Positions 5,344 to 28,183 of a DNA stretch of 64,000 nt are shown piece by piece. The stretch is from the IMG/VR virus record IMGVR_UViG_3300043411_001777, positions 62,001-126,000 of that record; one strand, written 5' to 3'. The stretch's first letter is position 1; each line of letters starts with the position of its first letter. Position numbers and translations under genes: made by a program. The notes beneath the pieces were generated by a model. That model saw nothing but the letters and a program-made list of their open reading frames with translations, searched no databases and had not been told where the DNA came from.

Positions 5344-7077
5344 GTGAACGAAGAAATCCCAGAGAACCTCCCCGCCATTGTTGACGTGATTCGTGCCGAA
5401 ACCGTCGCGGATACAAGCGAACCCGTCGCAATTGGCCAGTGGTTCTGGCGCCGGGCCAAGCCCGAACGCTATCTCGTCTGCGTTACCCATGTAGGTTCAA
5501 ACTTCGCTATGGTTGAAACCGTGGGAGGCCGAACCGAACGAATTCTATTGGAAGATTGGGAACGCCATTGTCGAAAGGCAAAGGCCCCTAATCGCTATAT
5601 CGACACCCAGGTTGGCTTCCACAAGGAACGAGTGCAAGAGCTTCTGTCCGAAGTGCAGGCCGTCACGGCCCGACTCGGACTTCAGCCTACTGAAGCGCTC
5701 GGCAATAGCACGTCCAGCACCAGCCTCGCAGTCGTGCATGGTGTGGGTGACGTCCAGGCCCACAAGCTCGAATTGATCGAGGCGAAGAGCAAGACACTCC
5801 CCGAGCTTTTCAAGGAAATCGAGGGCCAGCATGCCGCTATGGCCATGTGGATGAAAGCCTCACTCATCCCCATGAAGGCAATTGCAGCTCAGGCTAGGCA
5901 GGCAACGTCGAGCATTGACAGTCGGATCATGATGGTCGAGCTATACGCGGGCTTGACTGAGGAACTGACCCAGATCCTGGACGGGGAGCCCGCCCCAAAT
6001 GACACGCGCATCCACCTGTTTCAGCGCCAGCATTACATGGATGAGGAATGCCTGGCTCAATATGAAGCCGGGGGCATGGATTTCCGTGGCATCGGTGCTT
6101 TTGACAAGTGGCTTGCCCGCCCCCAAAACCTGAATCGTATCCTGCCTTTCCCACGCAGTATCGTTGCATTTCAGGTACGCCGAAAGGCTAAGGATTACGG
6201 CGAGGCCCGCTCACTGTCTGAAGCGATCCGCTTCTGGGAAATGGGAGAAGCCGACAAGCTGACGTTCCTGTATATCCGAAACGGAGATACCCTTCACCGA
6301 TTGAGCACGGCTGTTGAATTCGGCGAGAATCTTTTCCCGGACCATGAGAATGAGGAACTTCTGGGCGAGGGTCCGAAGTGGATCGTACAGAGTAGCTTTG
6401 GATTCGAGAGGGTCATTTCAGAGCGCGAGCATGACGCAGTCATGCTAAAGCGGGAAGAAGAAAACGCAAAATACAAGCGTGAGCTGGCGGCGTGGAAATC
6501 AGAGTCTGAAAAGACGCGCAGTCATTTTGAGCCATATAAACCATATGGGCGGGACACCCATGTTCCCCTCTCACGTGACAGCGTCTATTACGATGATGCT
6601 ATGCGGTCGATGGCGGAGAGTGCGGTTGCACACAACCGGATTGCCGTCGTAATCCAGGGGCTTCTGGACCGCTCGATTGCGCTCCACCCTCACCCTCCCT
6701 GGCAGCTTTGGACCCCGGAAGGTTTTACGGGCGCGCTGGAACTCGTTTTTGACGCGTCCCGGGGCATTGCTAATGGGGAGCCGCCGAACTTTGAGGCGTA
6801 CTTTGCCCGGCTTGGAGAGAGCATTAAGGCTGGCTCCATGGTGATTGGAGCGCAGGAGCTGTGGGAACGCGCAGAAGCTGAAAAGGAAAACGACCGGCGA
6901 CGGAGAAGTTATCGATACCGTTCGGACGAGTGTTACGAGAAGTCCAGTTTCCCTATGGGGGAAGCCCTCCAAAGAAGTACGGATGCAACAACGTTCACTG
7001 CGGTAATCCGTTCGCCTACGTCGAAAAGGACTGTCCAACTTCGTGCCCAAGGTGTGGCGCCAGTATGGGACGGCTAA
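5344..7077 (+). CDS. large hypothetical protein (577 aa); C-terminus possibly replaced
   Basis: long ORF with coiled-coil N-half; last ~49 codons overlap a Zn-finger ORF. Confidence 0.8.
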   Translation: MNEEIPENLPAIVDVIRAETVADTSEPVAIGQWFWRRAKPERYLVCVTHVGSNFAMVETVGGRTERILLEDWERHCRKAKAPNRYIDTQVGFHKERVQELLSEVQAVTARLGLQPTEALGNSTSSTSLAVVHGVGDVQAHKLELIEAKSKTLPELFKEIEGQHAAMAMWMKASLIPMKAIAAQARQATSSIDSRIMMVELYAGLTEELTQILDGEPAPNDTRIHLFQRQHYMDEECLAQYEAGGMDFRGIGAFDKWLARPQNLNRILPFPRSIVAFQVRRKAKDYGEARSLSEAIRFWEMGEADKLTFLYIRNGDTLHRLSTAVEFGENLFPDHENEELLGEGPKWIVQSSFGFERVISEREHDAVMLKREEENAKYKRELAAWKSESEKTRSHFEPYKPYGRDTHVPLSRDSVYYDDAMRSMAESAVAHNRIAVVIQGLLDRSIALHPHPPWQLWTPEGFTGALELVFDASRGIANGEPPNFEAYFARLGESIKAGSMVIGAQELWERAEAEKENDRRRRSYRYRSDECYEKSSFPMGEALQRSTDATTFTAVIRSPTSKRTVQLRAQGVAPVWDG

Positions 7078-7124
7078 CCGAATCCGAAATACTCTACTAT
7101 GTAGAGTTTGTTCCTGGAGACTAG
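6930..7124 (+). CDS. small Zn-ribbon protein (CNNVHC...CPRCG)
   Basis: GTG start; paired Cys motifs; stop lies 2 nt before the rtcB start. Confidence 0.55.
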   Translation: MLREVQFPYGGSPPKKYGCNNVHCGNPFAYVEKDCPTSCPRCGASMGRLTESEILYYVEFVPGD

Positions 7125-7126
7125 AA

Positions 7127-8353
7127 ATGCGTGTAATTCAGTCCAATGAGATGCGAGTCCCCGTCAAGATTTGGGACGGCGGCGGAAACGTTCCTTTCGA
7201 GGACGCCGTTATCGGGCAGATTTCCAATGCTGCCACCCTTCCCATCATCCACAACCATGTTGCGCTTATGCCCGACGGGCATTTTGGCATCGGAGCCGCG
7301 GTCGGATCAGTAATCCCCACCGTCAACGCCATCATCCCTGCGGCTGTAGGCGTGGACATTGGTTGCGGTATGGCTGCGGTTCAGACTTCCCTGAACGCCT
7401 CCCAGCTTCCAGACTCACTCGCTGCACTTCGCTCTGCGATTGAGCAGGCGGTTCCCCATGGCCGTTCCGACAACGGTGGGTCGAATGACGTGGGGTCCTT
7501 CCGGGGCAACTCCCTTCCTGCAACCCACGCAAAGGCATGGGCGGATGAACTGGCCGTGGGGTACGCAAGGATCGCATCGAAGTATCCCAAGCTCGGCTCT
7601 GGTAATTCGGCCAACCACCTCGGAACTCTCGGAACCGGTAATCATTTCACAGAGTTGTGCCTTGACGAGTCGGGCCAGGTTTGGGTGATGCTGCATTCGG
7701 GAAGCCGCGGGGTTGGTAACCGTTTCGGTATGCATTTCATCGCCTTGGCGAAGGAGGATATGATCAAGGCTGGCCTGACGGCGGTCGACAAGGATCTGTC
7801 CTACTTGACCGAGGGGACCCAGCATTTCAACGATTATGTTGAGGCCGTGGATTGGGCGCAGAAGTACGCCCGAATCAACCGCCAGCTCATGATGGGGGAG
7901 GTTATCCGCGTGATGCGTGATTTCCTCCCACCATTCACGCTGACCGAGATGGCGGTCAACTGCCACCACAACTATGTGGCGCGCGAGCACCACTTTGGAC
8001 AGGATGTCTGGCTCACCCGTAAGGGGGCTGTTTCTGCTGCACAAGGGCAGTTGGGCATCATCCCTGGATCGATGGGTGCCAAGAGCTTCATCGTTCGTGG
8101 GAAGGGCAACCCCGAGTCCTTCCATAGCTGTTCGCACGGTGCGGGTCGGTCTATGTCTCGGGGTGAGGCCAAGCGCCGTTTCTCACTTGAGGACCACGAG
8201 AAGGCCACTGTTGGGGTGGAGTGCCGAAAGGATGTCGGAGTCATTGATGAGACCCCGGCTGCGTACAAGTCGATTGACAACGTTATGGCGGCTCAGACGG
8301 ATCTCGTCGAGATTGTCTACACACTCAAGCAGGTTCTTTGTGTGAAGGGGTAA
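7127..8353 (+). CDS. rtcB: RtcB family RNA ligase
   Basis: MPDGHFGIG, GVDIGCG, GTLGTGNHFTE, LHSGSRG, HHNY, PGSMG, SHGAGR, DETPAAYK motifs; GGAGA SD before ATG 7127. Confidence 0.97.
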   Translation: MRVIQSNEMRVPVKIWDGGGNVPFEDAVIGQISNAATLPIIHNHVALMPDGHFGIGAAVGSVIPTVNAIIPAAVGVDIGCGMAAVQTSLNASQLPDSLAALRSAIEQAVPHGRSDNGGSNDVGSFRGNSLPATHAKAWADELAVGYARIASKYPKLGSGNSANHLGTLGTGNHFTELCLDESGQVWVMLHSGSRGVGNRFGMHFIALAKEDMIKAGLTAVDKDLSYLTEGTQHFNDYVEAVDWAQKYARINRQLMMGEVIRVMRDFLPPFTLTEMAVNCHHNYVAREHHFGQDVWLTRKGAVSAAQGQLGIIPGSMGAKSFIVRGKGNPESFHSCSHGAGRSMSRGEAKRRFSLEDHEKATVGVECRKDVGVIDETPAAYKSIDNVMAAQTDLVEIVYTLKQVLCVKG

Positions 8354-9196: not shown

Positions 9197-9365
9197 TCTC
9201 CTCTACGACGAGGTGCCGTTCGATCTACACGCGGCCCTCATCGAAGCATACTTCGACTACATAGCTGAGCTGTTCCGCAACAGATTCAGGCACCTCCAAC
9301 CCATTTCGGTTGAGGTTGACTTTGGCGACAAATGGGGTTGGACAAATGACGCAAACAACGGGTAA
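9186..9365 (+). CDS. hypothetical protein (59 aa, MTNDLLYDEVPF...)
   Basis: hand translated; fills the gap between neighbours. Confidence 0.5.
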   Translation: MTNDLLYDEVPFDLHAALIEAYFDYIAELFRNRFRHLQPISVEVDFGDKWGWTNDANNG

Positions 9366-9660
9366 TGTCGAAAACCCGGCTCTTCTTATCCAAAGCGCTT
9401 TCTTCCTTGCCAAAGCAAAGAAGACGCTCAAACGCTATTCTGAGTTAGATCAGATCGTTGAAGGCCCCCCGCAAGGGATTCTCAAGGCAGAGGCCGACTT
9501 CATAGAGGGCCAACGCGGCCTAAGGCACCTTTGCGGAAAGAACCTGCATTCCAAGCTCAAAGACCTTCCCGACGAGTTGCTTGAAACGTGGCTTTTGGCT
9601 GGGGAGGAACTCAGCAACGCCTGCGCCAAAATTAGAAACGACCGAAAGGGCAGCACATGA
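9346..9660 (+). CDS. hypothetical protein, paralog A
   Basis: shares LLE.W.LAGE....C..IRNDRK with the next gene. Confidence 0.7.
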   Translation: MTQTTGNVENPALLIQSAFFLAKAKKTLKRYSELDQIVEGPPQGILKAEADFIEGQRGLRHLCGKNLHSKLKDLPDELLETWLLAGEELSNACAKIRNDRKGST

Positions 9661-9965
9661 CCAATGATATCCCAAACGGGTATTTCCGACAGGATATGAC
9701 TGCTCCTAGCATTGGGGGCATAGACCCAGTTCTTCTTGCTCATTTCGCGTACTTCTTTGCTAGAGCAACAAAACGCCTCGCAACCGCCACTGTTCCCCAA
9801 GAACTTCAAGAAGCGGATTCCTCCGCAAGTTTCCACGGGCGAAGACTACGCTCAATCCTCGGAAAGCTTCCGAATGATGACTTACTTGAAAGATGGGCGC
9901 TAGCCGGCGAGCAGATTCACAAGATTTGCACCCAAATCAGAAACGACCGAAAGGACAACAAATGA
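9657..9965 (+). CDS. hypothetical protein, paralog B
   Basis: ATGA overlaps on both sides; paralog of the previous gene. Confidence 0.75.
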   Translation: MTNDIPNGYFRQDMTAPSIGGIDPVLLAHFAYFFARATKRLATATVPQELQEADSSASFHGRRLRSILGKLPNDDLLERWALAGEQIHKICTQIRNDRKDNK

Positions 9966-11095
9966 TCAGTTTCGCGGACATTGTAGTAGACCTCCGTTAC
10001 GGCGACTGTGGCAAAGGCGCCGTAGTTTACGAGCTTTGCAAGGACCCCCGTTACGACATCGTCCTCCGGTGGAATGGGGGGTCCAACGCTGGCCACACGA
10101 TTTACCACAATGGGGTGAAATTCGCCACCCACCTCATTCCCACTGGAATCTTCCACGGTAAGCTTTGTGTGATCGGGTCCGGTTGTGTGGTTAACCCGCG
10201 CAAGTTTTTTGAGGAGCTTGAGTCCCTTCGCAATATGGGCATTGAAACCGAGGGTAAGGTTTTCATTGCCAAGAACGCCCATATTGTGACCGAAGAGCAT
10301 ATTGCCTCCGAACAAGCCGAATCCAAAATCGGCACCACTAAACAGGGGATTGGCCCTGCCTACGCTGCAAAGCACGCCCGTACTGGCATTCGAGCAGAGT
10401 CCGTCCCCGAGCTGGCACCTTACCTCGTTGACCTCTATGAGCTGTTCTACAGCTCAACACCCTATGGAGTCCTAGCCGAAGGGGCACAGGGGTTCGACAT
10501 TGATATTGACTGGTGTGCAGAATACCCTTTTAGCAGCTCATCCATTGCGACCGTTGCAGGAGCTATTCAGAATGGCATTCCTTGGGACAAGGTTCGCAAG
10601 GTGTTCGGGGTGGCTAAGGCTTACGACACTTATGTGGGCTCCCGGGACTTTGAACCCAAGAACGCGATTTTCCAAAAGCTGCGCGAGCTGGGCTCTGAAT
10701 TTGGGGCTACTACAGGCCGTCCTCGCCAGTGCAATTGGTTGGACCTATATGGGTTGACCAAGGCGATCGAAGTGAACAGCGTTACAGACGTGGTCATTTC
10801 CAAGATGGATATCCTACGGGAGCTGAACAAACAGACTGACAACCAGAACTGGTGCTTTGCGCATAGCCGCGAATCCCTTCCTGGGGAGGATTCATTCGTG
10901 GCTTATCTCAGCGATCACCTTATGAAGCTGCAAAGCGTGAAACGCCTCCATTGGAGGAATTCGCCAACAGATTCAATGGGGAATGGGACGATGTTCTGTC
11001 GGGGCACAAGCCGAACTGACAAAACGCAATTAGAAATCATGCGTGACATTCTCCGTCAAGAGCAATTTAGGTACATTTCCAAGGAAGGGCTATGA
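9962..11095 (+). CDS. purA: adenylosuccinate synthetase, short form
   Basis: GDCGKG, GGSNAGHT, HLIPTG, GTTKQGIGPAY, EGAQG, EFGATTGRPRQ, SKMD. Confidence 0.92.
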   Translation: MISFADIVVDLRYGDCGKGAVVYELCKDPRYDIVLRWNGGSNAGHTIYHNGVKFATHLIPTGIFHGKLCVIGSGCVVNPRKFFEELESLRNMGIETEGKVFIAKNAHIVTEEHIASEQAESKIGTTKQGIGPAYAAKHARTGIRAESVPELAPYLVDLYELFYSSTPYGVLAEGAQGFDIDIDWCAEYPFSSSSIATVAGAIQNGIPWDKVRKVFGVAKAYDTYVGSRDFEPKNAIFQKLRELGSEFGATTGRPRQCNWLDLYGLTKAIEVNSVTDVVISKMDILRELNKQTDNQNWCFAHSRESLPGEDSFVAYLSDHLMKLQSVKRLHWRNSPTDSMGNGTMFCRGTSRTDKTQLEIMRDILRQEQFRYISKEGL

Positions 11096-11598
11096 CCTCA
11101 GTATTCCTGGATTCTGATGGTGTTTGCGCTGATTTTGACCGCGGATTCCCTGAAATCTTTGGCATTGACCACCGGTCAATCCCAGAAGAAGAGATGTGGC
11201 GGCTGGTTGCGGAACTCCCAACCTTTTTTGATGAGCTGCCTCTTATGCCAGATGCAGAAGAGCTGTTCAATGGGTTGCGGGACTACGATCCTATTATCCT
11301 AACCGCATGCCCTAAGGCTTGTTTTCAAGCGGCTGCAATCGCTAAGAAACGATGGGTTCGGCGGCACTTCGGGCTTCATGTAAGAGTGCTTCCGGTTTGG
11401 GGTGGGAAGAATAAACCCCTCTACATGCACCAGCCTGGGGATATCCTTATTGACGATTGGCAGGACAATATCACGGCTTGGAACGCTTTTGGCGGAACTG
11501 GCATCCTGCACTTGGATGCAGCTTCCTCGCTTGAGGTTGCACGTATGTCCTTAGCCTATGACACGGATAGGGCAGCCCGTCGACGGGTTCGGGAGTAA
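11092..11598 (+). CDS. HAD-family 5'(3')-deoxyribonucleotidase-like
   Basis: FLDSDGV motif I, ILTA motif II, K, LIDD motif IV. Confidence 0.88.
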   Translation: MTSVFLDSDGVCADFDRGFPEIFGIDHRSIPEEEMWRLVAELPTFFDELPLMPDAEELFNGLRDYDPIILTACPKACFQAAAIAKKRWVRRHFGLHVRVLPVWGGKNKPLYMHQPGDILIDDWQDNITAWNAFGGTGILHLDAASSLEVARMSLAYDTDRAARRRVRE

Positions 11599-11601
11599 GG
11601 T

Positions 11602-12354
11602 ATGGATTCAAAGTTTCGTGTTCTTCCTCCCGAGCACCTACTTTCTACGGGGCTTCTGTTCGAGATCAACAGAGCCGTCCTGCACAAGTTCGGACTGGCC
11701 CTCGCATACACCACGGACGACACTGATGCGTCCAAACCAGCCTATCTGTCTATCCTAAAAGTGGATGACCCCGAGGGGCTAATCTTCGGCGAAGACCTAC
11801 GTTCTTCGGGCTACCGCAAGTACAAGGACTTTCTTAACGAAGAAACCCCTAAGCTTGCGTGTCGTCTGGGTACCTTTGGTTGGCTAGATCAGCCTGGGAA
11901 TGTCGTGACTAAGATAGAGCAATTTACAGGGGAGTACCGTTGGTTGTCCAACTTCTTCGATGTCGAAGTGGTTTTGGATGGCGTGACGTACAGCTCCACT
12001 GAGCACGCTTACCAAGCGGCGAAGACTCTTGACCCGATTGAGCGGGAACGTGTCCGATTGGCCCCCACGCACGGGGCCTCCAAGCGGGAGGGGCGAAAGA
12101 TTACCCTCCGCCCCGGCTGGGACAGCATCAAAAACGATGTCATGTTGGACCTTCTTCGGCAGAAGTTCGCGCGTCCGGACTTGAGGCGGCTTCTCGACGA
12201 GACTGGGGAAACTCAGCTTGTTGAGGGCAATCACTGGCATGATGTGTGGTTTGGCGTGTGTAGCGGCAAGTGTCGTAGTCCTCATGCTAAGCCTGAGGGT
12301 GCCAATCATCTAGGCCGAATGCTCATGCAGGTCCGTGACGAGAACAGGAAATGA
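11602..12354 (+). CDS. NADAR (DUF1768/YbiA-like) protein with an extra N-terminal domain
   Basis: WLSNFF, STEHAYQAAK, KF..., LVEGNHWHDVWFG, GANHLGRMLMQVR. Confidence 0.9.
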   Translation: MDSKFRVLPPEHLLSTGLLFEINRAVLHKFGLALAYTTDDTDASKPAYLSILKVDDPEGLIFGEDLRSSGYRKYKDFLNEETPKLACRLGTFGWLDQPGNVVTKIEQFTGEYRWLSNFFDVEVVLDGVTYSSTEHAYQAAKTLDPIERERVRLAPTHGASKREGRKITLRPGWDSIKNDVMLDLLRQKFARPDLRRLLDETGETQLVEGNHWHDVWFGVCSGKCRSPHAKPEGANHLGRMLMQVRDENRK

Positions 12355-12644
12355 AACCGATTACACCCCAAGAGGTTGTCCGCAAGGTTAAACCTATCCC
12401 TCCCGAAATCATTGAGGCTTTCAATGATTTGATCAGGGAGAACATTTCCGGTAATTCGGCCAAAGTCCTGCTGCGACAAGCTATTTCACGGATAGCCCAG
12501 AAGACTGGGTTTAACGAACAAAAGATTCTTCGTTGTTGGTGGTTAGACAACGTGGAACCCATCTTTCGAGAAGCAGGTTGGGATGTGACATATCGGGACT
12601 CACACTACTACGAATCGTATTACCTTTTCACGGTGAAGAAGTGA
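12351..12644 (+). CDS. hypothetical protein, tandem copy 1
   Basis: MKPITPQEV...FTVKK. Confidence 0.8.
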   Translation: MKPITPQEVVRKVKPIPPEIIEAFNDLIRENISGNSAKVLLRQAISRIAQKTGFNEQKILRCWWLDNVEPIFREAGWDVTYRDSHYYESYYLFTVKK

Positions 12645-12949
12645 AACCAATTACACCCCAAGAAGTAGCTGACCGCAAGGTTAAGTCTATCCCACCCGAA
12701 GTCATTGAGGTTTTCAATGACTTGATTGCGGAGAACTTTTCCGGCAATTCCGCAACCGTCACGGTGACTCAAGCAGTCACCCGCATCAAAAAGAGGATGG
12801 GGAGGCGGACTAATGATGAACAAATCGTTGAACGGGGCTGGTTGGACATTGAGCCTATCTTTCGAGAAACGGGTTGGGATGTGGTATACGACCAGCCTGG
12901 GTACAACGAATCCTACGAGGCGAACTACACTTTCACGGTGAAGAAGTGA
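12641..12949 (+). CDS. hypothetical protein, tandem copy 2
   Basis: GTG 12641; MKPITPQEV...FTVKK. Confidence 0.8.
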   Translation: MKPITPQEVADRKVKSIPPEVIEVFNDLIAENFSGNSATVTVTQAVTRIKKRMGRRTNDEQIVERGWLDIEPIFRETGWDVVYDQPGYNESYEANYTFTVKK

Positions 12950-13413
12950 TGGCGTGGACCTCCAACCTCAAAATCCTCGAAATGAACCTGTTTGACGCCC
13001 CAAAAGGGGCTTTGCTGGTTCATGCCTGTAATTGCATGGGCCGATGGGGGAGCGGTATCGCCAAGGTCTTCGCAGAGAAAAAGTCGAAGGCTTACGTTGA
13101 ATACCAACACCTCTGTTCAAGGGGCGTAACCCCAGGTATGGCCGACATTCTTTCTGAGAATGTCGGCGTCCTCTTCACCTCCAAGGGCTACGCCAGCACC
13201 GTTGACAGTCCAGCTCAGATCCTGACAGCGACACGATTGGCCGTCAATGACCTTCTGGCCAAGTGTCGCTCGGAAGGGCTGTCGCTGGTGTACTCCAACA
13301 AGTTCAATTCCGGGCTGTTCAAGGTCCCCTGGGTGGACACTGAGAAAGTGCTGGCAGAGGTTCTGTCGGGTTACCCTGAAATCGAATGGGTGGTTTGTGA
13401 CTACACCGGCTAA
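12949..13413 (+). CDS. macrodomain protein (ADP-ribose processing, Poa1/DarG-like)
   Basis: NLFDAP, LVHACNCMGRWGSGIA, KFNSGLFKVPW. Confidence 0.88.
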   Translation: MAWTSNLKILEMNLFDAPKGALLVHACNCMGRWGSGIAKVFAEKKSKAYVEYQHLCSRGVTPGMADILSENVGVLFTSKGYASTVDSPAQILTATRLAVNDLLAKCRSEGLSLVYSNKFNSGLFKVPWVDTEKVLAEVLSGYPEIEWVVCDYTG

Positions 13414-13588
13414 CGATTTAACCGTTTTGCTTGGTAAAAACACGGCTGAGCTGCACCTTTGGTGTGCTCAGAACGAGATGAGCTTTCGGGTGTGGCGAGG
13501 CCTACTCGCGACCACGGTAGTGGCCAACCGAGTCAATGTCGTTTTGGACGACAACGGTCGTGTTACACAAGTTCTCGGAATTGGATGA
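13397..13588 (+). CDS. small protein, peptidase inhibitor I78-like C-terminus
   Basis: NRVNVVLDDNGRVTQV resembles the I78 RLNxxLDxxGRIxxV pattern. Confidence 0.45.
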   Translation: MTTPANDLTVLLGKNTAELHLWCAQNEMSFRVWRGLLATTVVANRVNVVLDDNGRVTQVLGIG

Positions 13589-13646
13589 TTTGACCCTAAG
13601 TAGAAATTACCTGTGGGTACTACCACTAGGTATCTAACAACGTGAG

Positions 13647-14177
13647 GTGCGGGTGGAATTAGAATTGCATGAGCCTTGGGTCCCTGATCTGGGGCAACTA
13701 CAGCTCCCTACTCTAAAAGGAGAGTTGTTCAGTGTACGTGACCTGTCACTGGCTGATTATGGGCTCGACGAACTGTTTAATGTAGCGCAAGAGGTTTGCT
13801 CCGCCTGTGAGGCGTGGACCCCTGGTAATACGAAAGCCAAAGTAGCCTTTATGAAGGCAGGCCGATCGCTTTTCCACCGATGGTCAAAGCGTTCCAAACG
13901 AAATCAGTTGCCTAGTATGTATGAGGGGTCTCTCACCCATTCTGGGGATGTATTCCTCGAATACGATGAATTTGGGTTACACTTAAACCCGTGGGGGCCG
14001 GCTTATGCTGACCAGCCTTCTGGTTTCGGTTCGCCCTACAAGGTTTGTGCACGTCGCTATGGGTCTAACGTAAACCTTTGGATGACACCGTTTTACCTGA
14101 CGTTAATTACGTACGACCAGCTACGGGCGCTGGCGTTGCAAACTCCCCAGAATGAGCTTCAAAATGAAGAAGAGTAA
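13647..14177 (+). CDS. hypothetical protein
   Basis: ORF after a short intergenic gap. Confidence 0.65.
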   Translation: MRVELELHEPWVPDLGQLQLPTLKGELFSVRDLSLADYGLDELFNVAQEVCSACEAWTPGNTKAKVAFMKAGRSLFHRWSKRSKRNQLPSMYEGSLTHSGDVFLEYDEFGLHLNPWGPAYADQPSGFGSPYKVCARRYGSNVNLWMTPFYLTLITYDQLRALALQTPQNELQNEEE

Positions 14178-14490
14178 TATCCACGCTCATCTCACGGAGG
14201 CAGGTATCACCCCTCCTTCGGAGATCGAATACCACGCGAAGGTGCGCGAGATCGCGTATTTCCTGGGGTGTACTGATGCTGAAACGGTGGCTCTGATTCG
14301 CGATGATCGCGATCGTCTGCTGGAAATTCATGATCTGGCCTCAACCTGGAATGAAATGTGGCGGTCGCAGACCTACTGCCCGAGTGATCGGGCTCAACTG
14401 CTGGTGATGCTTTCAGCCCCCATCATCAATCACGGTGCGGTGCTGGCGAAGTTCTCAGAGATCACGAATAGCGGGCTAACTTCCATCTAG
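14152..14490 (+). CDS. hypothetical protein
   Basis: co-oriented ORF. Confidence 0.65.
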   Translation: MSFKMKKSNIHAHLTEAGITPPSEIEYHAKVREIAYFLGCTDAETVALIRDDRDRLLEIHDLASTWNEMWRSQTYCPSDRAQLLVMLSAPIINHGAVLAKFSEITNSGLTSI

Positions 14491-15035: not shown

Positions 15036-16013
15036 ATGACGGTCGAATCTAGGACACTGATTCAGTGGCTCCAGGCGCATGGCTTTACGGAGGTGCCGAA
15101 GGCCGGGTCTAGTCACCATAAGTGGCAACACGAAAGCACAAAAGCTAAGGTCACGGCTATTCCAACGCAACGGGAAATGACCCCAAACACACTCACCCTC
15201 TGTTTGCGTGAAATCCAACGTGCGGGTTTCCGAAAGCAGGCAGTCCGAAAGGAATTATTCGCGATGCAAGCAGGCTCTGCAAAGTTGCAAGTTAGCACTA
15301 TCGACCTGAAGAAGCCAGTTGAGGCCCCAGTAGCTCAATCGGCTCCGTTGATTCAGGCGGAAACCTCGGCTCCGTCGGCTCCAGTAACCACGGCTAACGT
15401 GGCCTCACCCTCTCCTCTCCAGAGCCGTGTTGATGCTGTGCTCAGGCGTGCAGGCGAAGTCATTGGTCTACCGGCCTTCGCGAAATTCAAGACCACACCA
15501 GAGACGGTTGGGCTTTTGACGGCTCTCCTTGAGATCCTGACTCAGGTGGAGGATCTCTTTTTGGAGACCGCGTTGAAGGCTGAGGCTCCCAAAACGGAGC
15601 TTGCGCCCCTTCCCACATTTACTATGGTCCCCACCCCCTTTGCACTCCCTACCAAGCTCGTTCCCATTGGGATCCTCACGGAGGAACACCTTCGGGATGA
15701 GGCGCGGTCCCTTCAGCTCCCTAATGGGATGCCGCTGAATGAACTTCGTGAACAGGTTCGAGAGCTTCTTCTCACTGAAAAGTGGCTCCCTCTCGGGTCA
15801 ACTTTTCCGGGGTATGAGCTGTCAAATCACAAGCGAATCCGCTCCTATCGAGAGCGAGGATTTCCAACCACGCATCGCCGAAAGCTTGCTAAGATTCGGA
15901 TGCCCGTCGAAGGACGGATTACCCTTCGTGGTCCGGACAAGAAAACCACCAATATCCTGTTGACCAACATGGATGCCCTTTGGGCAGATTTGGAAAAGTC
16001 AGCGGCCCGGTAG
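15036..16013 (+). CDS. HicA-like N-terminal domain + Ala/Pro linker + NUMOD4-like C-terminal domain
   Basis: LIQWLQAHGFTEVPKAGSSHHKWQH...VTAIP...TL; EKWLPLGSTFPGYELSNHKRIRS. Confidence 0.8.
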   Translation: MTVESRTLIQWLQAHGFTEVPKAGSSHHKWQHESTKAKVTAIPTQREMTPNTLTLCLREIQRAGFRKQAVRKELFAMQAGSAKLQVSTIDLKKPVEAPVAQSAPLIQAETSAPSAPVTTANVASPSPLQSRVDAVLRRAGEVIGLPAFAKFKTTPETVGLLTALLEILTQVEDLFLETALKAEAPKTELAPLPTFTMVPTPFALPTKLVPIGILTEEHLRDEARSLQLPNGMPLNELREQVRELLLTEKWLPLGSTFPGYELSNHKRIRSYRERGFPTTHRRKLAKIRMPVEGRITLRGPDKKTTNILLTNMDALWADLEKSAAR

Positions 16014-21624: not shown

Positions 21625-22605
21625 TTAGAGTAGGTCGGAAACATCCGACTCAAGTATAGCGCCATCCGCTGATGATATGCAATAAGGAGAAAACCAAATC
21701 CGCTCCTTATGCCGGTTTTTCGCATTCCCCTCATCCGAGGACTGCCCATACGCTCGGGTGGCCGAGTAGCTAAAACAACGCCACGACGACGGCATTTCAT
21801 GCTCACCATCGTATCCGCACAACGCAATTCTTATTCGGGGGTCTTCCCCGTGCTCCAGAGCCCATTCCCGAACCTTAGCCGATAGGTCCGGTTCTTCGTG
21901 GGTGTATAGGCCCGCATAGGTGCCCTCATCCGAGTAAGGCGGGTCTAGGAACACCCCTACAGTCTTGCCTCTGTAGAGAGCCCCCGTAGTGACTACCCGA
22001 GACCAATCCCCACAGCACACCCTGACGTGCCGTAGCCGCTCCCTGAGCGAAAACAGATAGTCCCACACGTCCTGCGTAGGTCGGTTGATGCCAACGCCTG
22101 TAGTGACGAGATTGGGGAGCTTACGGCGAACCCCGGGCGTGCCTTCCGGAGCTGGGACTTTACGGCTGTCTAAGACTCGGCCATTATCAATGTACCAGGG
22201 GCCTTTTCCGCTGCACCAGGCCGCGCCGATCCATGAGGAGATTCCCCATACCCACAGCCCAGCAACCTGACTGTCAAAATAGAAGGGGTCAGCCTCTAGC
22301 TTTGCAATCCGTGCAGCCCCCTCGTTCACTAGCCAAAGGTGGGTGGCGATTAGATCCGTCTCATTGACGGGACGATCAGCCCAGACGGCAACCCCTTCCG
22401 GGTCATGTTGAATCGCCCGGAAGAAATTGCAAATGAAGCCGTTCAGGTCATTTACGGTTTCAATGCGTGGTTTGTGGGGTCGTGCCAACAAAACGGCACC
22501 CGACCCCACAAACGGTTCCGCATAATGGTCTACGTCACCGAGAGCCCTCCAAACTTCGGCCCCCACACGACTTTTACCACCGAAATAGGCAAATGGAGAG
22601 CGCAT
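21625..22605 (-). CDS. DNA adenine methyltransferase (Dam/D12 class)
   Basis: YFGGKS, EPFVGSGAV, VNDLN, FLDPPY. Confidence 0.93.
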   Translation of the reverse strand: MRSPFAYFGGKSRVGAEVWRALGDVDHYAEPFVGSGAVLLARPHKPRIETVNDLNGFICNFFRAIQHDPEGVAVWADRPVNETDLIATHLWLVNEGAARIAKLEADPFYFDSQVAGLWVWGISSWIGAAWCSGKGPWYIDNGRVLDSRKVPAPEGTPGVRRKLPNLVTTGVGINRPTQDVWDYLFSLRERLRHVRVCCGDWSRVVTTGALYRGKTVGVFLDPPYSDEGTYAGLYTHEEPDLSAKVREWALEHGEDPRIRIALCGYDGEHEMPSSWRCFSYSATRAYGQSSDEGNAKNRHKERIWFSPYCISSADGAILESDVSDLL

Positions 22606-24563: not shown

Positions 24564-25121
24564 ATGCGTGAAATAAGACGTGTCTTCACAACGAACATCC
24601 TCTGCTGGTCCGATGGAATTAGGCTGGAAGGGCAGAATATCGTATTTGGAAGCCTTTTCGGCCCAAGAAATGCAGTTCGGGCTATCTGGGCTTACCTTGT
24701 AATGAAGAAGTCCGCGGAAGTTACAATTGAGGGCCTCGACAATTACTTCAAGCTCGACACTTCCAAGTACCTCACCATCCAAGCCCCGCTTGATAAGCGC
24801 GGCGGCGGATTACACCTAACGATGCTTCAAAGCGAAGCCACTAATCAGCTCTCTGCTTGGAGCAAGAGTTTTTACCAGCTCGGGTCTGACACCTATCCCT
24901 GGCCTTTCGGGGAAACTCCGTGGGACAGCTTTTGGGGTAAGCTGACACGTATGTGTACCGTACCCTTGCGCCCGGCATGGAAAGACCAAATGTGGGAAAT
25001 CGGTCGCCAATCTGGACTGATTACCGAACTCGACGGTTTTGGGGTCCCCGTCTTTAGCGTGTCGACCGACAATTGGTTTAAGGTCGTGATGCATAACATC
25101 CAAGCTGGAGTGCTCGTATGA
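24564..25121 (+). CDS. hypothetical protein, partner upstream of the methylase-helicase
   Basis: GTATGA overlap with the next gene. Confidence 0.75.
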   Translation: MREIRRVFTTNILCWSDGIRLEGQNIVFGSLFGPRNAVRAIWAYLVMKKSAEVTIEGLDNYFKLDTSKYLTIQAPLDKRGGGLHLTMLQSEATNQLSAWSKSFYQLGSDTYPWPFGETPWDSFWGKLTRMCTVPLRPAWKDQMWEIGRQSGLITELDGFGVPVFSVSTDNWFKVVMHNIQAGVLV

Positions 25122-28100
25122 CGCGTCTCGCGGCCACCCTAAAAATGCTGTATTACCCCACCCAAGATCGAATCCTCGATCTTTTGGGTGAATACATAAC
25201 CTTCACTAAGCCCTATTGGGTGAAAGAGCAAAAGCTCTTCCTTTTGGACCCTTGTTGTGGTGACGGTGCTGCGCTGAGCTTTCTTGCAAGCATTTGGTCC
25301 TCTTCGATTCCTACTGAAACGTGGGGCATTGAACTCCACGAGGAACGAGCTAAGAAGGCCAAGCTGCTGCTTGATCATGCCTATCACGGCAGTATGCACC
25401 AAGCCCTAATTACGGGCAAGTTTCACTGTGTCCTCCTAAACCCACCTTACGACTCTGGAGGTGAAGGGGAGCGCCAGGAAGTTCAATTCCTGCAAGACGC
25501 AACCCCATGGCTTGCCCACAATGGGATGCTCATTCTCATCATCCCGAGAAAGATTCTCCGCTTAGACTCTTTCCGCCAGCATATGGGGGTTCACTACTCC
25601 TACGTAGACGTTTTCGACTACCCCTCTCCCGAAAAGGAGCAATTCAATCAGGTTGTTGTAATCGCACGTCGCGATACCCATGGCTATTACCAGCGGGGGG
25701 TTCCGAATATCGACGCACCCTTCTTCCCAGAGTTGGGGAGCAAGAATTTCAATTGGGAAACTCCCCGAATTGACGAACGCCCCAAAGTTCGGGTGGTGAA
25801 TTTCGATCCTGAGGAATGGGTCGATAAGCTCCCTGGCTATAGCACCCAGCAATGGCAGCGGGCAATGCTGGACCAATCGGCGCAAGCCCATACGCCTTTG
25901 ATGATGCCACGCCCAGGTCACCGGGCACTGCTGCTTGCGGCAGGGCAGCTAAACGGCTATGAGCTGCGGCCTGGGTTGCTTGTTAAGGGCAGTTCAGAAA
26001 AGACCAAGCTGGTCATCCCGCAAGGGGATGAAGTTCTAGAACGGGAGAAGATCGTTACTCGAATCTCCCAGCTCGATATCACCAATGGTGTATTTGACAC
26101 TTGGCTCGTTCACGAGCATCAGGATAAGACCGTTCAATGGTTCTTGGAATACGGCGACGATCTATCAAAGGCGATCATCGCAACCCACAAGCCCCTTTTC
26201 AACGGAGACACCACACCGTGGGCCCCTGAGCTGGCCAAATTGCGGGCTCCTGGAATCCTCCCCGGAAAGACAACCCCCGAGTTTTTCCAGCTTCAAGTTG
26301 AAGCCGCTTGCGCTATCGCTTTGAGGTGGCGAAAGCACAAAAACACTAATGTTTCCGGAGAAATGGGTGTCGGCAAGACCACCCTCGGAATTGTCGCCTC
26401 AGAAATTTCCAAGCACAAGAAAACGATTGTCGTTTGCCCTTCCCACCTCGTAAAGAAGTGGGTTCGGGAATGCGCGATCATTACGGGACAACCTGGGGTT
26501 GCATTTCTGGCAAAGAAGCTCTCCGATGTCGACCGGTTTTTCGCGCCCGGCGCTCCCGCTCGATTCCTGATTATTAGTAAAGAAACCGCTAAGTTGGGGG
26601 CCAAGTGGCGCCATGCTTTCCACGTTAAAACTTCCCTTCATCGGAAGTGGCGTTGGGACGGTCCCGAGAAAGTCCAGGAAAAGCTCACTTATGTGAGTGC
26701 ACACTGCCCTACCTGCGGAGAAACGCCGTTCTTTGCGGAGGAAACCGCAATCCAAGTCAGCCTAGAACAGGCTCTCCAGAACAAGACAAAGGGGAAATGT
26801 CAGGCTTTGACCCCCGTCAAGTATGGCGTCACCACGGCGGAGGGGGCCGCTGTAGCTCCCGTGTTCCCGATCCCGCCCAAAAAGGACGACGATGACCCTC
26901 GCCATCGCTGTTTCAGCTCGCTTTGGCAGAGTGAGCCTTTGTCTGCAAAGGGGACAAAGCGTTGGGCGTTGGCAAAGTACGTCAATACGCATTACCCCCG
27001 CCAATACAGTCTGATTACAGACGAAGCACACATTCTTGCGAAGTCGGATTCGGATCAGGCCCGTGCGGTCCAGCTACTGGAATCCCAAGCGGTAAAGACT
27101 CTTTCAATGACGGGGACGATCTACAGCGGCCGTGCTAGCGGGCTGTTCCATCTTCTCTATAAGACGGATGGGGCTTTCCGACTCCTGTACAAGTACGATG
27201 AGACTCAGCTCTTTGTTGAGCATCATGGGCTGTTTGAAAGGGTCTTCAAGGAAGAAGAATACACGTCAACGTACGGCTATAAGAAGGGGAAAGGAAGTGG
27301 CCGGTTGCGGGAGATTCCGGGAATGTCTCCTGGAATGATTCCGCTATTGCTCCCGTCAACGATCTTCCTAAAGCTCAAAGACCTAGACGTAGAGCTTCCT
27401 CCATATCGTGAAATCGTGGTCTCGCTCAACCATGATGGGGATGTGCTTCGACAGGCTCAACTGTTAAAGGATAACGCGCTCGCAGTGATGCGTAAGCATC
27501 CCGAGCTGTTGGGCCAATACCTAATGGCCTGTCTCGGTTATCCCGACGCCCCCGAGAACGAAGAGAACATCGTTCTTAGGGACGAGGATGGGTATGAGGA
27601 AGTCATCGCGCACGCGGATGCGATCCCCAAGGAATCCTATCCTAAGGACCGTTATGTTGTAAACACGGTCAAAAACGAAAAGGAAGCTGGCCGTAGGGTG
27701 CTGGTGTTCTTCTCCCAGACTCATAAGCGTGATGCCCGAATGCGGGTCCAGCGTTTGCTGGAGGCCGAAGGGCTAAAGGTCGTAGTGCTCGACAGTAACG
27801 TCACGCCCGAAAAGCGTGAAGAATGGGTAGCAGAGCAAGTCGAAAAGGGTTTCGATGTCATGTTGACCAATGGTCGGCTGGTCGAAACCGGCCTTGACCT
27901 TTTGTTTGCTCACACTATCATCCAATACGGTACAGAGTACAGCATCAATACGCTACGTCAAAGCATTCGGCGTAGTTGGCGTTTGGGGCAAACAAAGCCC
28001 GTACGTGTAATTTTCCTCATATATGCGGATACCTTGCAGGAAAACGCGAGTAATCTGATCGCACGTAAGATGCGTGCGGCAGAGCAAGTGGACGGTGACG

Positions 28101-28183
28101 AGGTCCAAGGTTTGGGCTCCACCGATGATACTGGCGCAAACTTCTTCGTGGAGTTGGCGCAAGATGTGTTCTCAAAAAACTAG
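25118..28183 (+). CDS. N6-adenine methyltransferase - SF2 (SNF2-like) helicase fusion (DUF6094-like N-terminus)
   Basis: MTRLAATLKMLYYPT, LDPCCGDG, LNPPY; GEMGVGKT, DEAH, TGT, QSIRRSWRLGQ. Confidence 0.9.
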   Translation: MTRLAATLKMLYYPTQDRILDLLGEYITFTKPYWVKEQKLFLLDPCCGDGAALSFLASIWSSSIPTETWGIELHEERAKKAKLLLDHAYHGSMHQALITGKFHCVLLNPPYDSGGEGERQEVQFLQDATPWLAHNGMLILIIPRKILRLDSFRQHMGVHYSYVDVFDYPSPEKEQFNQVVVIARRDTHGYYQRGVPNIDAPFFPELGSKNFNWETPRIDERPKVRVVNFDPEEWVDKLPGYSTQQWQRAMLDQSAQAHTPLMMPRPGHRALLLAAGQLNGYELRPGLLVKGSSEKTKLVIPQGDEVLEREKIVTRISQLDITNGVFDTWLVHEHQDKTVQWFLEYGDDLSKAIIATHKPLFNGDTTPWAPELAKLRAPGILPGKTTPEFFQLQVEAACAIALRWRKHKNTNVSGEMGVGKTTLGIVASEISKHKKTIVVCPSHLVKKWVRECAIITGQPGVAFLAKKLSDVDRFFAPGAPARFLIISKETAKLGAKWRHAFHVKTSLHRKWRWDGPEKVQEKLTYVSAHCPTCGETPFFAEETAIQVSLEQALQNKTKGKCQALTPVKYGVTTAEGAAVAPVFPIPPKKDDDDPRHRCFSSLWQSEPLSAKGTKRWALAKYVNTHYPRQYSLITDEAHILAKSDSDQARAVQLLESQAVKTLSMTGTIYSGRASGLFHLLYKTDGAFRLLYKYDETQLFVEHHGLFERVFKEEEYTSTYGYKKGKGSGRLREIPGMSPGMIPLLLPSTIFLKLKDLDVELPPYREIVVSLNHDGDVLRQAQLLKDNALAVMRKHPELLGQYLMACLGYPDAPENEENIVLRDEDGYEEVIAHADAIPKESYPKDRYVVNTVKNEKEAGRRVLVFFSQTHKRDARMRVQRLLEAEGLKVVVLDSNVTPEKREEWVAEQVEKGFDVMLTNGRLVETGLDLLFAHTIIQYGTEYSINTLRQSIRRSWRLGQTKPVRVIFLIYADTLQENASNLIARKMRAAEQVDGDEVQGLGSTDDTGANFFVELAQDVFSKN

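What the first reader, a model, noticed from the sequence alone, without database searches (positions are those of the whole stretch)
11602..13413. NADAR and macrodomain side by side: possible cover against both DarTG types
Seen: a NADAR protein and a macrodomain protein separated only by a duplicated small gene. Established: NADAR (DarG1-type) enzymes remove guanine ADP-ribosylation made by DarT1, macrodomains (DarG2-type) remove thymidine ADP-ribosylation made by DarT2, and DarTG is an anti-phage system. Inference: a counter-defence cassette against DNA ADP-ribosylation. The extra ~100-aa N-terminal domain on the NADAR (LLFEINRAVLHKFGLAL) may target it.
Basis: partly seen in the sequence, partly recalled or inferred. 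Interest (0 to 1): 0.62.

Follow-up and report, generated by a model that had tools for sequence, protein, structure and literature searches.

The report
Phage ADP-ribose eraser gene cassette
A very large phage carries four tightly linked genes, two of which remove or process ADP-ribose; one resembles a proven phage counter to bacterial DNA ADP-ribosylation, while the other looks like a phosphatase that counters NAD+ destruction rather than a second DNA-repair enzyme.

Summary
Window 11602-13413 (+) holds four genes whose stop and start codons overlap. They encode a 250-aa NADAR protein with an extra 104-aa N-terminal domain, two tandem paralogs of a ~100-aa protein (65% identical), and a 154-aa macrodomain.

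- **NADAR.** The domain is 46-48% identical to AdfN of phage Bas32, a NADAR shown experimentally to neutralise DarT1. It keeps the catalytic Glu, Lys and Glu, so anti-DarT1-type activity is plausible.
- **Macrodomain.** It is not DarG2-like overall. Its best solved relative, over its full length, is yeast Poa1p, an ADP-ribose-1''-phosphate phosphatase. In 19 of 37 phage loci a homolog lies within 8 kb of a Namat-like NARP1 gene. This is the setting of the published phage phosphatase Adpp, which counters RES-type NAD+ breakdown.
- **Missing partners.** No NARP1 genes, DarT or PARP were found in the 206-kb fragment, which is about 39% of the genome.
- **N-terminal domain.** It belongs to a widespread phage small-protein family of unknown function. 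Among the 150 best family representatives, only this protein fuses it to a NADAR.
- **Small proteins.** They are phage-specific, mostly acidic, and have a winged-helix-like fold.

Verdict: a new variant of known phage ADP-ribose counter-defences, of moderate interest.

The parts
11602..12354 (+). Gene for a 250-aa two-domain protein: an N-terminal DUF7415-like domain fused to a NADAR ADP-ribosyl N-glycohydrolase domain
   Evidence: ORF. Pfam NADAR at E 3.6e-20 and PHROG 1017 at E 1.9e-37. RBS-like GGGAG lies before the ATG at 11602.
11602..11913 (+). N-terminal domain (residues 1-104): member of a widespread phage small-protein family of unknown function
   Evidence: 324 representatives at E<=1e-3, mostly stand-alone proteins of ~100 aa. 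Family members give sub-threshold Pfam DUF7415 hits; PHROG 3954 hits residues 14-42. A family HMM scores 98 bits over residues 5-100. pI is 5.6. Among the 150 best representatives, only this protein also carries a NADAR domain.
11914..12351 (+). NADAR catalytic domain (residues 105-250), of the AdfN-Bas32 / YbiA type
   Evidence: 48% identity at E 1e-28 to the NADAR of phage IrisVonRoten (Bas32). E134, K141, E208 and D214 are invariant in alignment A3. E. coli YbiA (2b3w) matches at E 5.2e-14. TIGR02464 scores 73.9 bits against a cut-off of 73.7.
12351..12644 (+). Small protein 1 (97 aa): the diverged tandem paralog, basic (pI 9.1), with an altered conserved PGYNE motif
   Evidence: Its start overlaps the NADAR stop (ATGA).
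12641..12949 (+). Small protein 2 (102 aa, GTG start): typical member of a phage-specific, mostly acidic, winged-helix-like family
   Evidence: 26 homologs at 38-54% identity, aligned as A1. AlphaFold2 gives pLDDT 91.6. The best fold matches are all winged-helix domains, but only at Z 5.4-6.9 and Foldseek E>=0.03. Three viral ESM Atlas clusters match at TM 0.82-0.91.
12949..13413 (+). Macrodomain protein (154 aa) of the Poa1p/Adpp type (predicted ADP-ribose-1''-phosphate phosphatase)
   Evidence: Pfam Macro. Poa1p (6lfq) matches at 1.3e-11 and DarG at 1.1e-3. The family profile A2 matches Poa1p at 2.5e-30 over its full length. Its start overlaps the stop of small protein 2 (TGATG).
9962..11598 (+). 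Upstream co-oriented genes: an adenylosuccinate-synthetase homolog (9962-11095) and an NT5C-like 5'(3')-deoxyribonucleotidase (11092-11598)
   Evidence: Pfam and PHROGs and NCBIfam. The two genes overlap by ATGA, and the second ends 3 nt before the NADAR start.

Best explanation
This is a co-expressed ADP-ribose 'eraser' cassette in the accessory region of a very large phage. Its two enzymes most likely counter two different NAD+-consuming host defences. They probably do not counter the two DarTG types.

1. **NADAR.** The domain is an N-glycohydrolase of the same kind as AdfN of phage Bas32. It is predicted to cut ADP-ribose off the N2 amino group of guanine in DNA or RNA. This would undo DarT1-like modification of replicating phage DNA.
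2. **Macrodomain.** It is a Poa1p/Adpp-type enzyme predicted to dephosphorylate ADP-ribose-1''-phosphate. That compound is the product of RES-type NAD+ phosphorolysis (aRES).
3. **Shared product.** Both reactions release free ADP-ribose. In related phages this is the substrate of the adjacent NARP1 enzymes (Adps, Namat) that rebuild NAD+.
4. **Accessory parts.** The N-terminal domain on the NADAR and the two winged-helix-like small proteins have unknown roles. My guess is binding or targeting.

**Shown:** the domain identities, the conserved catalytic residues, the kinship to AdfN-Bas32 and to Poa1p, the gene coupling, and the NARP1 linkage of the macrodomain family.

**Inferred:** the substrates, the in vivo targets, and any role of the accessory parts.
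For: **NADAR**
- It is 46-48% identical to the Bas32 NADAR, and E134, K141, E208 and D214 are invariant.
- AdfN-Bas32 neutralises DarT1 and rescues three phages on DarTG1 hosts, but does not rescue on DarTG2 (PMC11825919).
- All four E. coli and phage T4 NADAR subtypes tested hydrolyse guanine-ADPr in vitro and none hydrolyses thymine-ADPr (PMC11125620). NADARs also act on guanosine-ADPr in RNA (PMC11833690).

**Macrodomain**
- Poa1p is the best solved match over the full length.
- The motifs shared with Poa1p are invariant in the family: the HxCN stretch, GxGIA, TS, and NSGxF-VPW.
- A Namat-like gene lies within 8 kb in 19 of 37 homolog loci, and within 550 bp in 13 of them. Earlier counts found Namat-like neighbours in 17 of 35 loci within 8 kb and in 16 of 37 within 3.5 kb on the same strand.
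- Adps-like neighbours occur in 13-15 loci. Their identities were confirmed by Pfam as NAPRTase/NAMPT_N and Pribosyltran/Pribosyl_synth.
- The published Adpp is a Poa1p-like macrodomain in NARP1 operons. It converts ADPR-1''P to ADPR and overcomes aRES.

**The pairing recurs**
- A NADAR sits directly beside a homolog of this macrodomain in L093, L096 and L106, each time with a Namat-like gene nearby.

**Coupling**
- Overlapping stop and start codons link all four genes.
Against: - No Namat/NAMPT, Adps or NMNAT was found in the 206-kb fragment. An Adpp here therefore has no visible NARP1 partner, although only about 39% of the genome is held.
- In the tree, the window's macrodomain pairs with L094. 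In that locus the notable neighbours are a WGR-PARP and a DNA ligase, not NARP1. This sub-lineage may therefore erase a different ADP-ribose adduct.
- The NADARs beside macrodomain homologs in L093, L096 and L106 belong to a different NADAR subgroup, only 25-28% identical.
- E. coli YbiA and T4 gp30.3 are active in vitro but fail to rescue cells from DarT1 on their own. In vivo function therefore cannot be read from sequence alone.
- The NADAR reaches the riboflavin-intermediate N-glycosidase model TIGR02464, just above its cut-off.
- Homology to Vibrio phage Gary Adpp itself was not tested. tblastn of the macrodomain against cultured phages found only 6 records.
Confidence: 0.5

Rival explanations
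1. The NADAR reverses DarT1 guanine ADP-ribosylation and the macrodomain reverses DarT2 thymine ADP-ribosylation, so the cassette covers both DarTG types.
For: The NADAR half is as in the best explanation. The macrodomain lies in the TARG1/DarG/Poa1p branch: PADLOC DarG at E 1.2e-5, NCBIfam DarG at 1.4e-3, and PDB DarG at 1.1e-3. N28 aligns with DarG N22, and K79 aligns with K78 of phiKZ AdfM, which corresponds to DarG K80. Phage macrodomains that counter DarTG2 exist (AdfM, PMC13309987).
Against: DarG similarity is confined to the first ~60 residues, whereas Poa1p matches end to end with far better scores. Identity to AdfM is only 23%. The Lys column is variable in the family, with Lys in 7 of 37 members, and 5 of those 7 are NARP1-linked. 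About half of the family has NARP1 genes within 8 kb.
Confidence: 0.12
2. A purely metabolic ADPR-salvage module. Both enzymes act only on soluble ADP-ribose derivatives: N-linked conjugates or immune signals for the NADAR, and ADPR-1''P or O-acetyl-ADPR for the macrodomain. They would supply ADPR for NAD+ rebuilding or destroy signals, with no role on DNA.
For: NARP1-NADAR-macrodomain arrays occur in L093 and L106. There is precedent for NARP1 accessory enzymes that liberate ADPR, namely Adpp and RyDEP. [quoted passage not shown] Homologs of the small protein sit between NMNAT-Nudix and NAMPT in Ruegeria phages, and near NAPRTase/NadE, SIR2 or PARP genes elsewhere.
Against: The closest characterised relative of this NADAR acts against DNA ADP-ribosylation in vivo. 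The NARP1-linked NADARs are a different subgroup. No NAD+ salvage genes are seen in this fragment.
Confidence: 0.2
3. Nucleotide or riboflavin metabolite damage control. The NADAR would act as a YbiA-type N-glycosidase on reactive ribosylamino-pyrimidine intermediates or damaged nucleotides, as part of the adjacent purine and nucleotide metabolism genes.
For: TIGR02464 (riboflavin-intermediate N-glycosidase) scores 73.9 bits against a cut-off of 73.7. The third catalytic residue is the YbiA-type Glu (PMC11543638). The neighbours are a PurA-like gene and an NT5C-like gene. In L152 a NADAR and a small-protein homolog lie beside an IMPDH/GMP-reductase-like gene. The Thalassavirus NADAR lies beside ribonucleotide reductase genes.
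Against: The score is at the threshold only. The same clade includes AdfN-Bas32, which has proven anti-DarT1 function. This model does not explain the coupled macrodomain.
Confidence: 0.08
4. RNA repair side-product clearance. The Poa1p-like macrodomain would remove ADPR-1''P made during tRNA repair, working with the RtcB ligase encoded 3 kb upstream.
For: RtcB lies at 7043-8353 (E 1.8e-124). Poa1p's native role is in tRNA splicing. RNA ligases lie near homologs of the macrodomain and of the small protein.
Against: RtcB joins 3'-phosphate or 2',3'-cyclic-phosphate ends directly. By established knowledge of that pathway it leaves no 2'-phosphate, so no KptA/Tpt1 reaction and no ADPR-1''P by-product are expected. 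No KptA/Tpt1 was found in the fragment.
Confidence: 0.05

Closest known systems
AdfN (anti-DarT factor NADAR), specifically AdfN of phage Bas32/IrisVonRoten (Johannesman et al. 2025, PMC11825919)
   Same: Both are orphan phage NADARs. The domains are 46-48% identical. The catalytic Glu and Lys and the YbiA-type Glu are conserved. No DarT gene was found in the contig.
   Different: The window protein carries a 104-aa N-terminal domain that is absent from Bas32 AdfN and from all 80 closest viral NADARs. It is translationally coupled to a macrodomain. Its activity is untested.
Adpp, the NARP1-associated ADPR-1''-phosphate phosphatase (Osterman et al., bioRxiv 10.64898/2026.01.28.702374), and yeast Poa1p (PDB 6LFQ)
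   Same: Both are single-domain macrodomain proteins of ~150 aa. Poa1p is the best structural-database relative. About half of the family members have Adps and Namat genes within 8 kb.
   Different: No NARP1 genes are seen in this 206-kb fragment. The window protein forms a separate long branch with L094, whose neighbour is a PARP. Direct comparison with Vibrio phage Gary Adpp was not made.
DarG2 macrodomain and phage AdfM (phiKZ gp104; PMC13309987)
   Same: All have the macro fold. The Asn of the active site is conserved, and a Lys aligns with the catalytic Lys.
   Different: Identity is only 23%. DarG similarity is limited to the N-terminal third. The Lys is not conserved in the family. There is no DarT-binding domain.
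DarG1 (BC4488-subfamily NADAR antitoxin of DarTG1; PMC11543638)
   Same: Both have the NADAR fold and the catalytic Glu and Lys. Both have an N-terminal addition to the YbiA core.
   Different: The third catalytic residue is Glu here, not Asp. The N-terminal addition is an independent, slightly acidic domain family, not the short basic beta-beta-alpha extension of DarG1. No DarT gene lies nearby.
Phage NADAR-Macro gene neighbourhoods and fusions (Iyer, Burroughs and Aravind 2022, PMC9503650)
   Same: NADAR and Macro genes co-occur in large phages. They were proposed to divide labour on ADP-ribose derivatives.
   Different: This particular architecture is not described there: a DUF7415-like domain fused to NADAR, followed by two winged-helix-like small genes and a Poa1p-type macrodomain.

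Membership tests
NADAR superfamily / phage AdfN | NADAR (YbiA-like) domain above the curated threshold | tested here: met
   PF08719 scores 73.3 bits against a cut-off of 35.1. YbiA (2b3w) matches at E 5.2e-14.
NADAR superfamily / phage AdfN | Catalytic Glu and Lys seven residues apart (E88/K95 in E. coli C7 NADAR; E36/K43 in T4 AdfN) | tested here: met
   E134 and K141 are invariant in A3, which includes Bas32 AdfN. The residue roles come from PMC11543638 and PMC11825919.
NADAR superfamily / phage AdfN | Close kinship to an AdfN with demonstrated anti-DarTG1 activity | tested here: met
   48% identity at E 1e-28 to the NADAR ORF of IrisVonRoten (Bas32). Identity is 46% in A3.
NADAR superfamily / phage AdfN | Hydrolysis of guanine-N2-ADP-ribose and rescue from DarT1 | not testable with these tools
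   This needs enzyme assays and toxicity or plaque assays.
DarG1 (DarT1-associated BC4488 NADAR antitoxin) | Asp at the third catalytic position (D171 in E. coli C7) | tested here: not met
   The window protein has the YbiA-type Glu (E208) (classification).
DarG1 (DarT1-associated BC4488 NADAR antitoxin) | Encoded next to a DarT1 toxin gene | tested here: not met
   PF14487 finds nothing in the 206-kb contig. The control genomes were also silent, so sensitivity is unproven. None of the neighbouring ORFs scanned hit a DarT model.
DarG1 (DarT1-associated BC4488 NADAR antitoxin) | Short basic N-terminal extension forming a putative ssDNA groove | tested here: not met
   The extension is a 104-aa independent domain with pI 5.6 and 13 K+R against 15 D+E.
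DarG2 / AdfM macrodomain | The macrodomain is closest to DarG macrodomains | tested here: not met
   Poa1p matches at 1.3e-11 against DarG at 1.1e-3 for the protein. For the family profile, Poa1p matches at 2.5e-30 over the full length, against 1.4e-11 for DarG over ~60 residues.
DarG2 / AdfM macrodomain | Active-site Asn and Lys (N22/K80 in T. aquaticus DarG; N23/K78 in phiKZ AdfM) | tested here: inconclusive
   N28 is invariant. K79 aligns with AdfM K78. However, the column holds Lys in only 7 of 37 family members, 5 of which are NARP1-linked.
DarG2 / AdfM macrodomain | Removal of thymine-linked ADP-ribose from ssDNA | not testable with these tools
   This needs an enzyme assay.
Adpp / Poa1p-type ADPR-1''-phosphate phosphatase | Full-length similarity to Poa1p with shared motifs | tested here: met
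   Family-invariant residues are H25, N28, G34, G36, I37, A38, T77, S78, N120, S121 and G122.
Adpp / Poa1p-type ADPR-1''-phosphate phosphatase | Gene embedded in or beside a NARP1 (Adps + Namat) operon | tested here: not met
   For this genome fragment, no Namat or Adps was found. For the family it is met: a Namat-like gene lies within 8 kb in 19 of 37 loci.
Adpp / Poa1p-type ADPR-1''-phosphate phosphatase | Direct homology to the characterised Adpp of Vibrio phage Gary (KNV71_gp137) | not tested
   That sequence was not fetched. tblastn against cultured phages at E<=1e-3 returned only Myxococcus phage Mx1 and Sinorhizobium phages.
Adpp / Poa1p-type ADPR-1''-phosphate phosphatase | Conversion of ADPR-1''P to ADPR | not testable with these tools
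   This needs an LC-MS assay.

The most novel reading that the evidence does not exclude
The accessory parts may be functional and new. In this reading, the DUF7415-like N-terminal domain and the winged-helix-like small proteins are binding modules that aim the erasers at a host defence protein or at replicating phage DNA.

The NADAR fusion would then be a convergent, DarG2-like 'binder plus hydrolase' antitoxin mimic. The small-protein family would be a new class of NAD+/ADP-ribose-network counter-defence factor.

The small-protein family is mostly acidic and recurs near NAMPT/NMNAT, NAPRT/NadE, SIR2, PARP and NADAR genes.
Probability: 0.12. Interest if true: 0.65.

Novelty: new variant of a known kind. 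Interest (0 to 1): 0.42.

Why it matters
Phage enzymes that erase ADP-ribose or rebuild NAD+ are a fast-growing class of counter-defence. AdfN, AdfM, Adpp, RyDEP and NARP1-3 have all been described since 2024.

This cassette links an AdfN-type NADAR and an Adpp-type macrodomain in one translationally coupled unit. That suggests some large phages bundle answers to mechanistically different NAD+-consuming defences.

It also flags two uncharacterised and widespread phage protein families as candidates for accessory roles. They are the DUF7415-like domain, with 324 representative clusters, and the winged-helix-like small protein.

It refines how such pairs should be annotated. A macrodomain beside a NADAR should not be assumed to be DarG2-like.

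Tried and rejected
- **DNA similarity.** blastn of 9800-14200 against cultured phages found no match.
- **Single-sequence locus search.** The macrodomain alone found nothing in viral contigs. The profile A2 was needed.
- **NADAR structure.** I submitted the full protein to AlphaFold2 as a single sequence instead of with an alignment. The fold of the N-terminal domain is therefore unknown.
- **ESM Atlas.** Look-ups for the N-terminal domain and for a stand-alone homolog gave only low-TM rows. Cluster names were uninformative.
- **Small-protein fold.** Foldseek against PDB gave nothing at E<=0.001. VIA-align gave only generic winged-helix resemblance at Z<7. I call the fold winged-helix-like, no more.
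- **Small-protein neighbours.** No neighbour family recurs beyond single lineages of about 5 loci. I therefore rejected the idea that it is an obligate partner of the NADAR or the macrodomain, and did not run complex prediction. No binding is claimed.
- **Lys79 as a marker.** I tested whether Lys79 marks a DarG-like subtype that avoids NARP1. It does not.
- **Promoter and terminator scan.** Counts were at chance level, so operon boundaries cannot be set this way.
- **Own-genome searches.** NAMPT/Namat, NMNAT, KptA, PARP and DarT were all negative. For PARP and DarT the control genomes were also silent. PARP absence was re-checked by phmmer with the L094 PARP.
- **AdfN accession.** The supplement of the AdfN paper is not held. 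Bas32 was identified through the BASEL paper and the record MZ501075.
- **PurZ and a Z-genome.** This is not supported. Bacterial PurA models score higher than the PurZ model, which gives 101.8 bits against a cut-off of 300.
Full report
**Setting.** The window is bases 62001-126000 of a 206,089-bp IMG/VR viral contig that CheckV rates about 39% complete. It is therefore a piece of a very large phage. The region of interest lies in a run of + strand genes:
- an RtcB RNA ligase at 7043-8353;
- an adenylosuccinate-synthetase homolog at 9962-11095;
- an NT5C-like deoxyribonucleotidase at 11092-11598;
- the four genes of the finding.

Replication genes lie further downstream. They include a family A polymerase with an intein, a DnaB-like helicase and SNF2 helicases.

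**Observation.** The ORF map and the DNA show four genes.
- A 250-aa NADAR protein is encoded at 11602-12354.
- A 97-aa protein is encoded at 12351-12644.
- A 102-aa paralog with a GTG start is encoded at 12641-12949.
- A 154-aa macrodomain protein is encoded at 12949-13413.

Every junction overlaps (ATGA, GTGA, TGATG), which is the usual sign of translational coupling. Pfam calls NADAR at E 3.6e-20 and Macro at E 7.2e-07, both above their gathering scores. The two small proteins are 65% identical in protein and 68.6% in DNA, so the duplication is real but not recent. The first copy has lost the family's most conserved motif (PGYNE) and has become basic, with pI 9.1 against 5.2. These are the only NADAR, macrodomain and small-protein genes in the contig.

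**The NADAR.** Residues 105-250 form the catalytic domain.
- The only solved relative found by sequence is E. coli YbiA (E 5.2e-14). NCBIfam's riboflavin-intermediate N-glycosidase model is reached only at the cut-off (73.9 against 73.7 bits).
- The domain is common in phages. There are 308 confirmed stretches in IMG/VR and 459 cultured phage records, among them many T5-like phages.
- Bas32 of the BASEL collection is phage IrisVonRoten, record MZ501075. Its NADAR matches the window's domain at E 1e-28 and 48% identity.
- That protein, AdfN-Bas32, neutralises DarT1 in E. coli. It restores plating of three DarTG1-sensitive phages but has no effect on DarTG2 (PMC11825919).
- In alignment A3, E134 and K141 are invariant. 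They are the equivalents of E88/K95 in E. coli C7 NADAR and of E36/K43 in T4 AdfN. E208 and D214 are also invariant.
- E208 is the YbiA-subfamily glutamate. DarT1-linked NADARs have Asp there and T4-like NADARs have His (PMC11543638).

So the enzyme is an orphan, YbiA-type NADAR of the same clade as a validated AdfN. All NADAR subtypes tested so far cut guanine-ADPr and not thymine-ADPr in vitro. In vivo rescue varies, however: YbiA and T4 gp30.3 fail on their own (PMC11125620). Function here is probable, not certain.

**The N-terminal domain.** Residues 1-104 matched none of the 80 closest viral NADAR loci.
- An exhaustive HMMER search found 324 representative proteins at E<=1e-3. Most are stand-alone proteins of ~100 aa. 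Some are fused to unrelated C-termini, and one 1459-aa protein has 12 matched stretches.
- Family members give only sub-threshold hits to Pfam DUF7415.
- Two examples sit in arrays of small unannotated phage genes.
- The family consensus has two strongly conserved motifs, FEINR-VLHP-GLAL and DDPEG.
- Among the 150 best representatives, only the window's own protein also has a NADAR domain.
- The domain is slightly acidic (pI 5.6). It therefore does not resemble the basic putative ssDNA-binding extension of DarG1 NADARs.
- Its fold and role remain unknown, because my single-sequence fold failed.

**The macrodomain.** The best solved relative is yeast Poa1p, an ADP-ribose-1''-phosphate phosphatase.
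- Poa1p matches at E 1.3e-11. M. tuberculosis DarG follows at 1.1e-3 and TARG1 at about 0.6.
- With a profile of 18 homologs (A2), Poa1p matches end to end at 2.5e-30. DarG matches only over the first ~60 residues (1.4e-11), and TARG1 matches at about 6e-11.
- The family shares with Poa1p the HxCN, GxGIA, TS and NSGxF-VPW motifs.

Genomic context then decided the matter.
- Two assemblies carrying 45-48% identical homologs have the gene directly after a NAMPT-like gene and a PRPP-synthetase-like gene. One of them also has a NADAR in between.
- Across 37 loci, 19 have the NAMPT-like (Namat) gene within 8 kb, 13 of them within 550 bp.
- 13-15 loci also have the Adps-like gene, and Pfam confirmed both neighbour families.
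- This is the NARP1 NAD+-reconstitution operon. A recent preprint shows that Poa1p-like macrodomains in NARP1 operons (Adpp) convert ADPR-1''P to ADPR. ADPR-1''P is the product of RES-domain NAD+ phosphorolysis by the aRES defence, and the conversion lets NARP1 overcome aRES.

*DarG/AdfM-type catalysis.* In an alignment with phiKZ AdfM, N28 matches the catalytic Asn and K79 aligns with AdfM K78. But that column holds Lys in only 7 of 37 family members, and 5 of those 7 are NARP1-linked. The Lys is therefore not a family requirement and says little.

*Tree.* The window's macrodomain groups only with L094 (support 93/90), on long branches inside an unresolved set of largely NARP1-linked clades. 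In L094 the neighbours are a DNA ligase and a WGR-PARP_reg-PARP protein. This hints that the sub-lineage might erase other ADP-ribose adducts.

*Own genome.* The fragment holds no Namat, Adps, NMNAT, KptA, PARP or DarT. About 60% of the genome is missing.

**The small proteins.**
- 26 homologs were found by the word-indexed search and 44 loci in IMG/VR.
- AlphaFold2 with the family alignment gives pLDDT 91.6.
- The nearest folds are all winged-helix domains, but only at Z 5.4-6.9 and Foldseek E>=0.03.
- The ESM Atlas holds three viral clusters of the same fold.
- The family is mostly acidic, with median pI 5.2.
- Neighbourhoods are not conserved.
- A noticeable minority lie near NAD+/ADP-ribose genes:
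  - between NMNAT-Nudix and NAMPT in Ruegeria phages;
  - after NAPRTase and NadE;
  - near SIR2;
  - near PARP genes in L143, L144 and L156;
  - directly after a NADAR in L152.

I have no proper background rate for this, so it is a lead and not a finding.

**Synthesis.** The cassette is best read as a coupled pair of ADP-ribose-processing enzymes with accessory proteins. The NADAR most likely reverses base-linked (guanine N2) ADP-ribosylation, as AdfN does. The macrodomain most likely dephosphorylates ADPR-1''P, as Adpp does. Both reactions yield free ADPR.

The metabolic-only, riboflavin and nucleotide, and RNA-repair readings are less likely, for the reasons given under rivals.

Phage NADAR-Macro co-occurrence and fusions were already catalogued (PMC9503650). 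AdfN, AdfM and Adpp are all published. What is new here is the arrangement: the apparently unique N-terminal fusion, the duplicated winged-helix-like genes, and an Adpp-type macrodomain coupled to an AdfN-type NADAR without a visible NARP1.

Noticed in passing
window 7043-8353 (+): A full-length RtcB RNA ligase (Pfam E 1.8e-124) lies 3 kb upstream of the cassette. No KptA/Tpt1 was found in the contig.
   Followed up: partly
window 9893/9962-11095 (+): An adenylosuccinate-synthetase homolog. PHROG 1211 labels it as the PurZ-type enzyme, but NCBIfam's PurZ model gives only 101.8 bits (cut-off 300) while bacterial PurA models give ~250 bits, themselves below cut-off. The best phage match is a 735-kb uncultured megaphage at 41.6% identity. 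PurA versus PurZ is unresolved, and there is no evidence here for a Z-genome.
   Followed up: partly
window 9310-9660 and 9657-9965 (+): Two adjacent ORFs (116 and 102 aa) end in very similar C-terminal stretches (the translations share a motif ending IRNDRK). They look like another tandem duplication just upstream.
   Followed up: no
window 15036-16013 (+): A 325-aa protein whose first ~55 residues match the HicA toxin family (Pfam E 2.5e-07; PHROG 353 'toxin'). The long C-terminal part has no match.
   Followed up: no
window 38828-43282 (-): A family A DNA polymerase of 1484 aa is interrupted by an intein (Intein_splicing, E 3e-17).
   Followed up: no
window 25118-28183 (+) and 21625-22605 (-): A 1021-aa fusion of a DUF6094-type methyltransferase with an SNF2-like helicase, and a D12-class adenine methyltransferase.
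   Followed up: no
L094:9217-10482 (viral contig IMGVR_UViG_3300020046_005482): A phage-encoded WGR + PARP_reg + PARP catalytic-domain protein lies 1 kb downstream of the closest homolog (48%) of the window's macrodomain, with an ATP-dependent DNA ligase upstream. PARP-like genes also occur in L143, L144 and L156, near homologs of the small protein.
   Followed up: partly
L093:1814-5462 and L106:5759-8414: Arrays of a Namat-like gene, then a NADAR, then a Poa1p-like macrodomain (L093 also has an Adps-like gene upstream, and L106 has one about 2 kb away). This is a NARP1 operon with two candidate ADPR-liberating accessory enzymes. The NADAR there is a different subgroup, with a VEASPYD-IWGIG motif. 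I found no paper describing a NADAR as a NARP1 accessory.
   Followed up: partly
P0047 (1459 aa, JGI metagenome): A protein with 12 matched stretches of the same domain that forms the N-terminus of the window's NADAR. This suggests a repeatable binding module.
   Followed up: no
L152:7269-10217: A NADAR, then a small-protein homolog, then a YqeY-like protein, then an IMPDH/GMP-reductase-like gene. This is a second case of a NADAR and the small protein beside purine-metabolism genes.
   Followed up: partly
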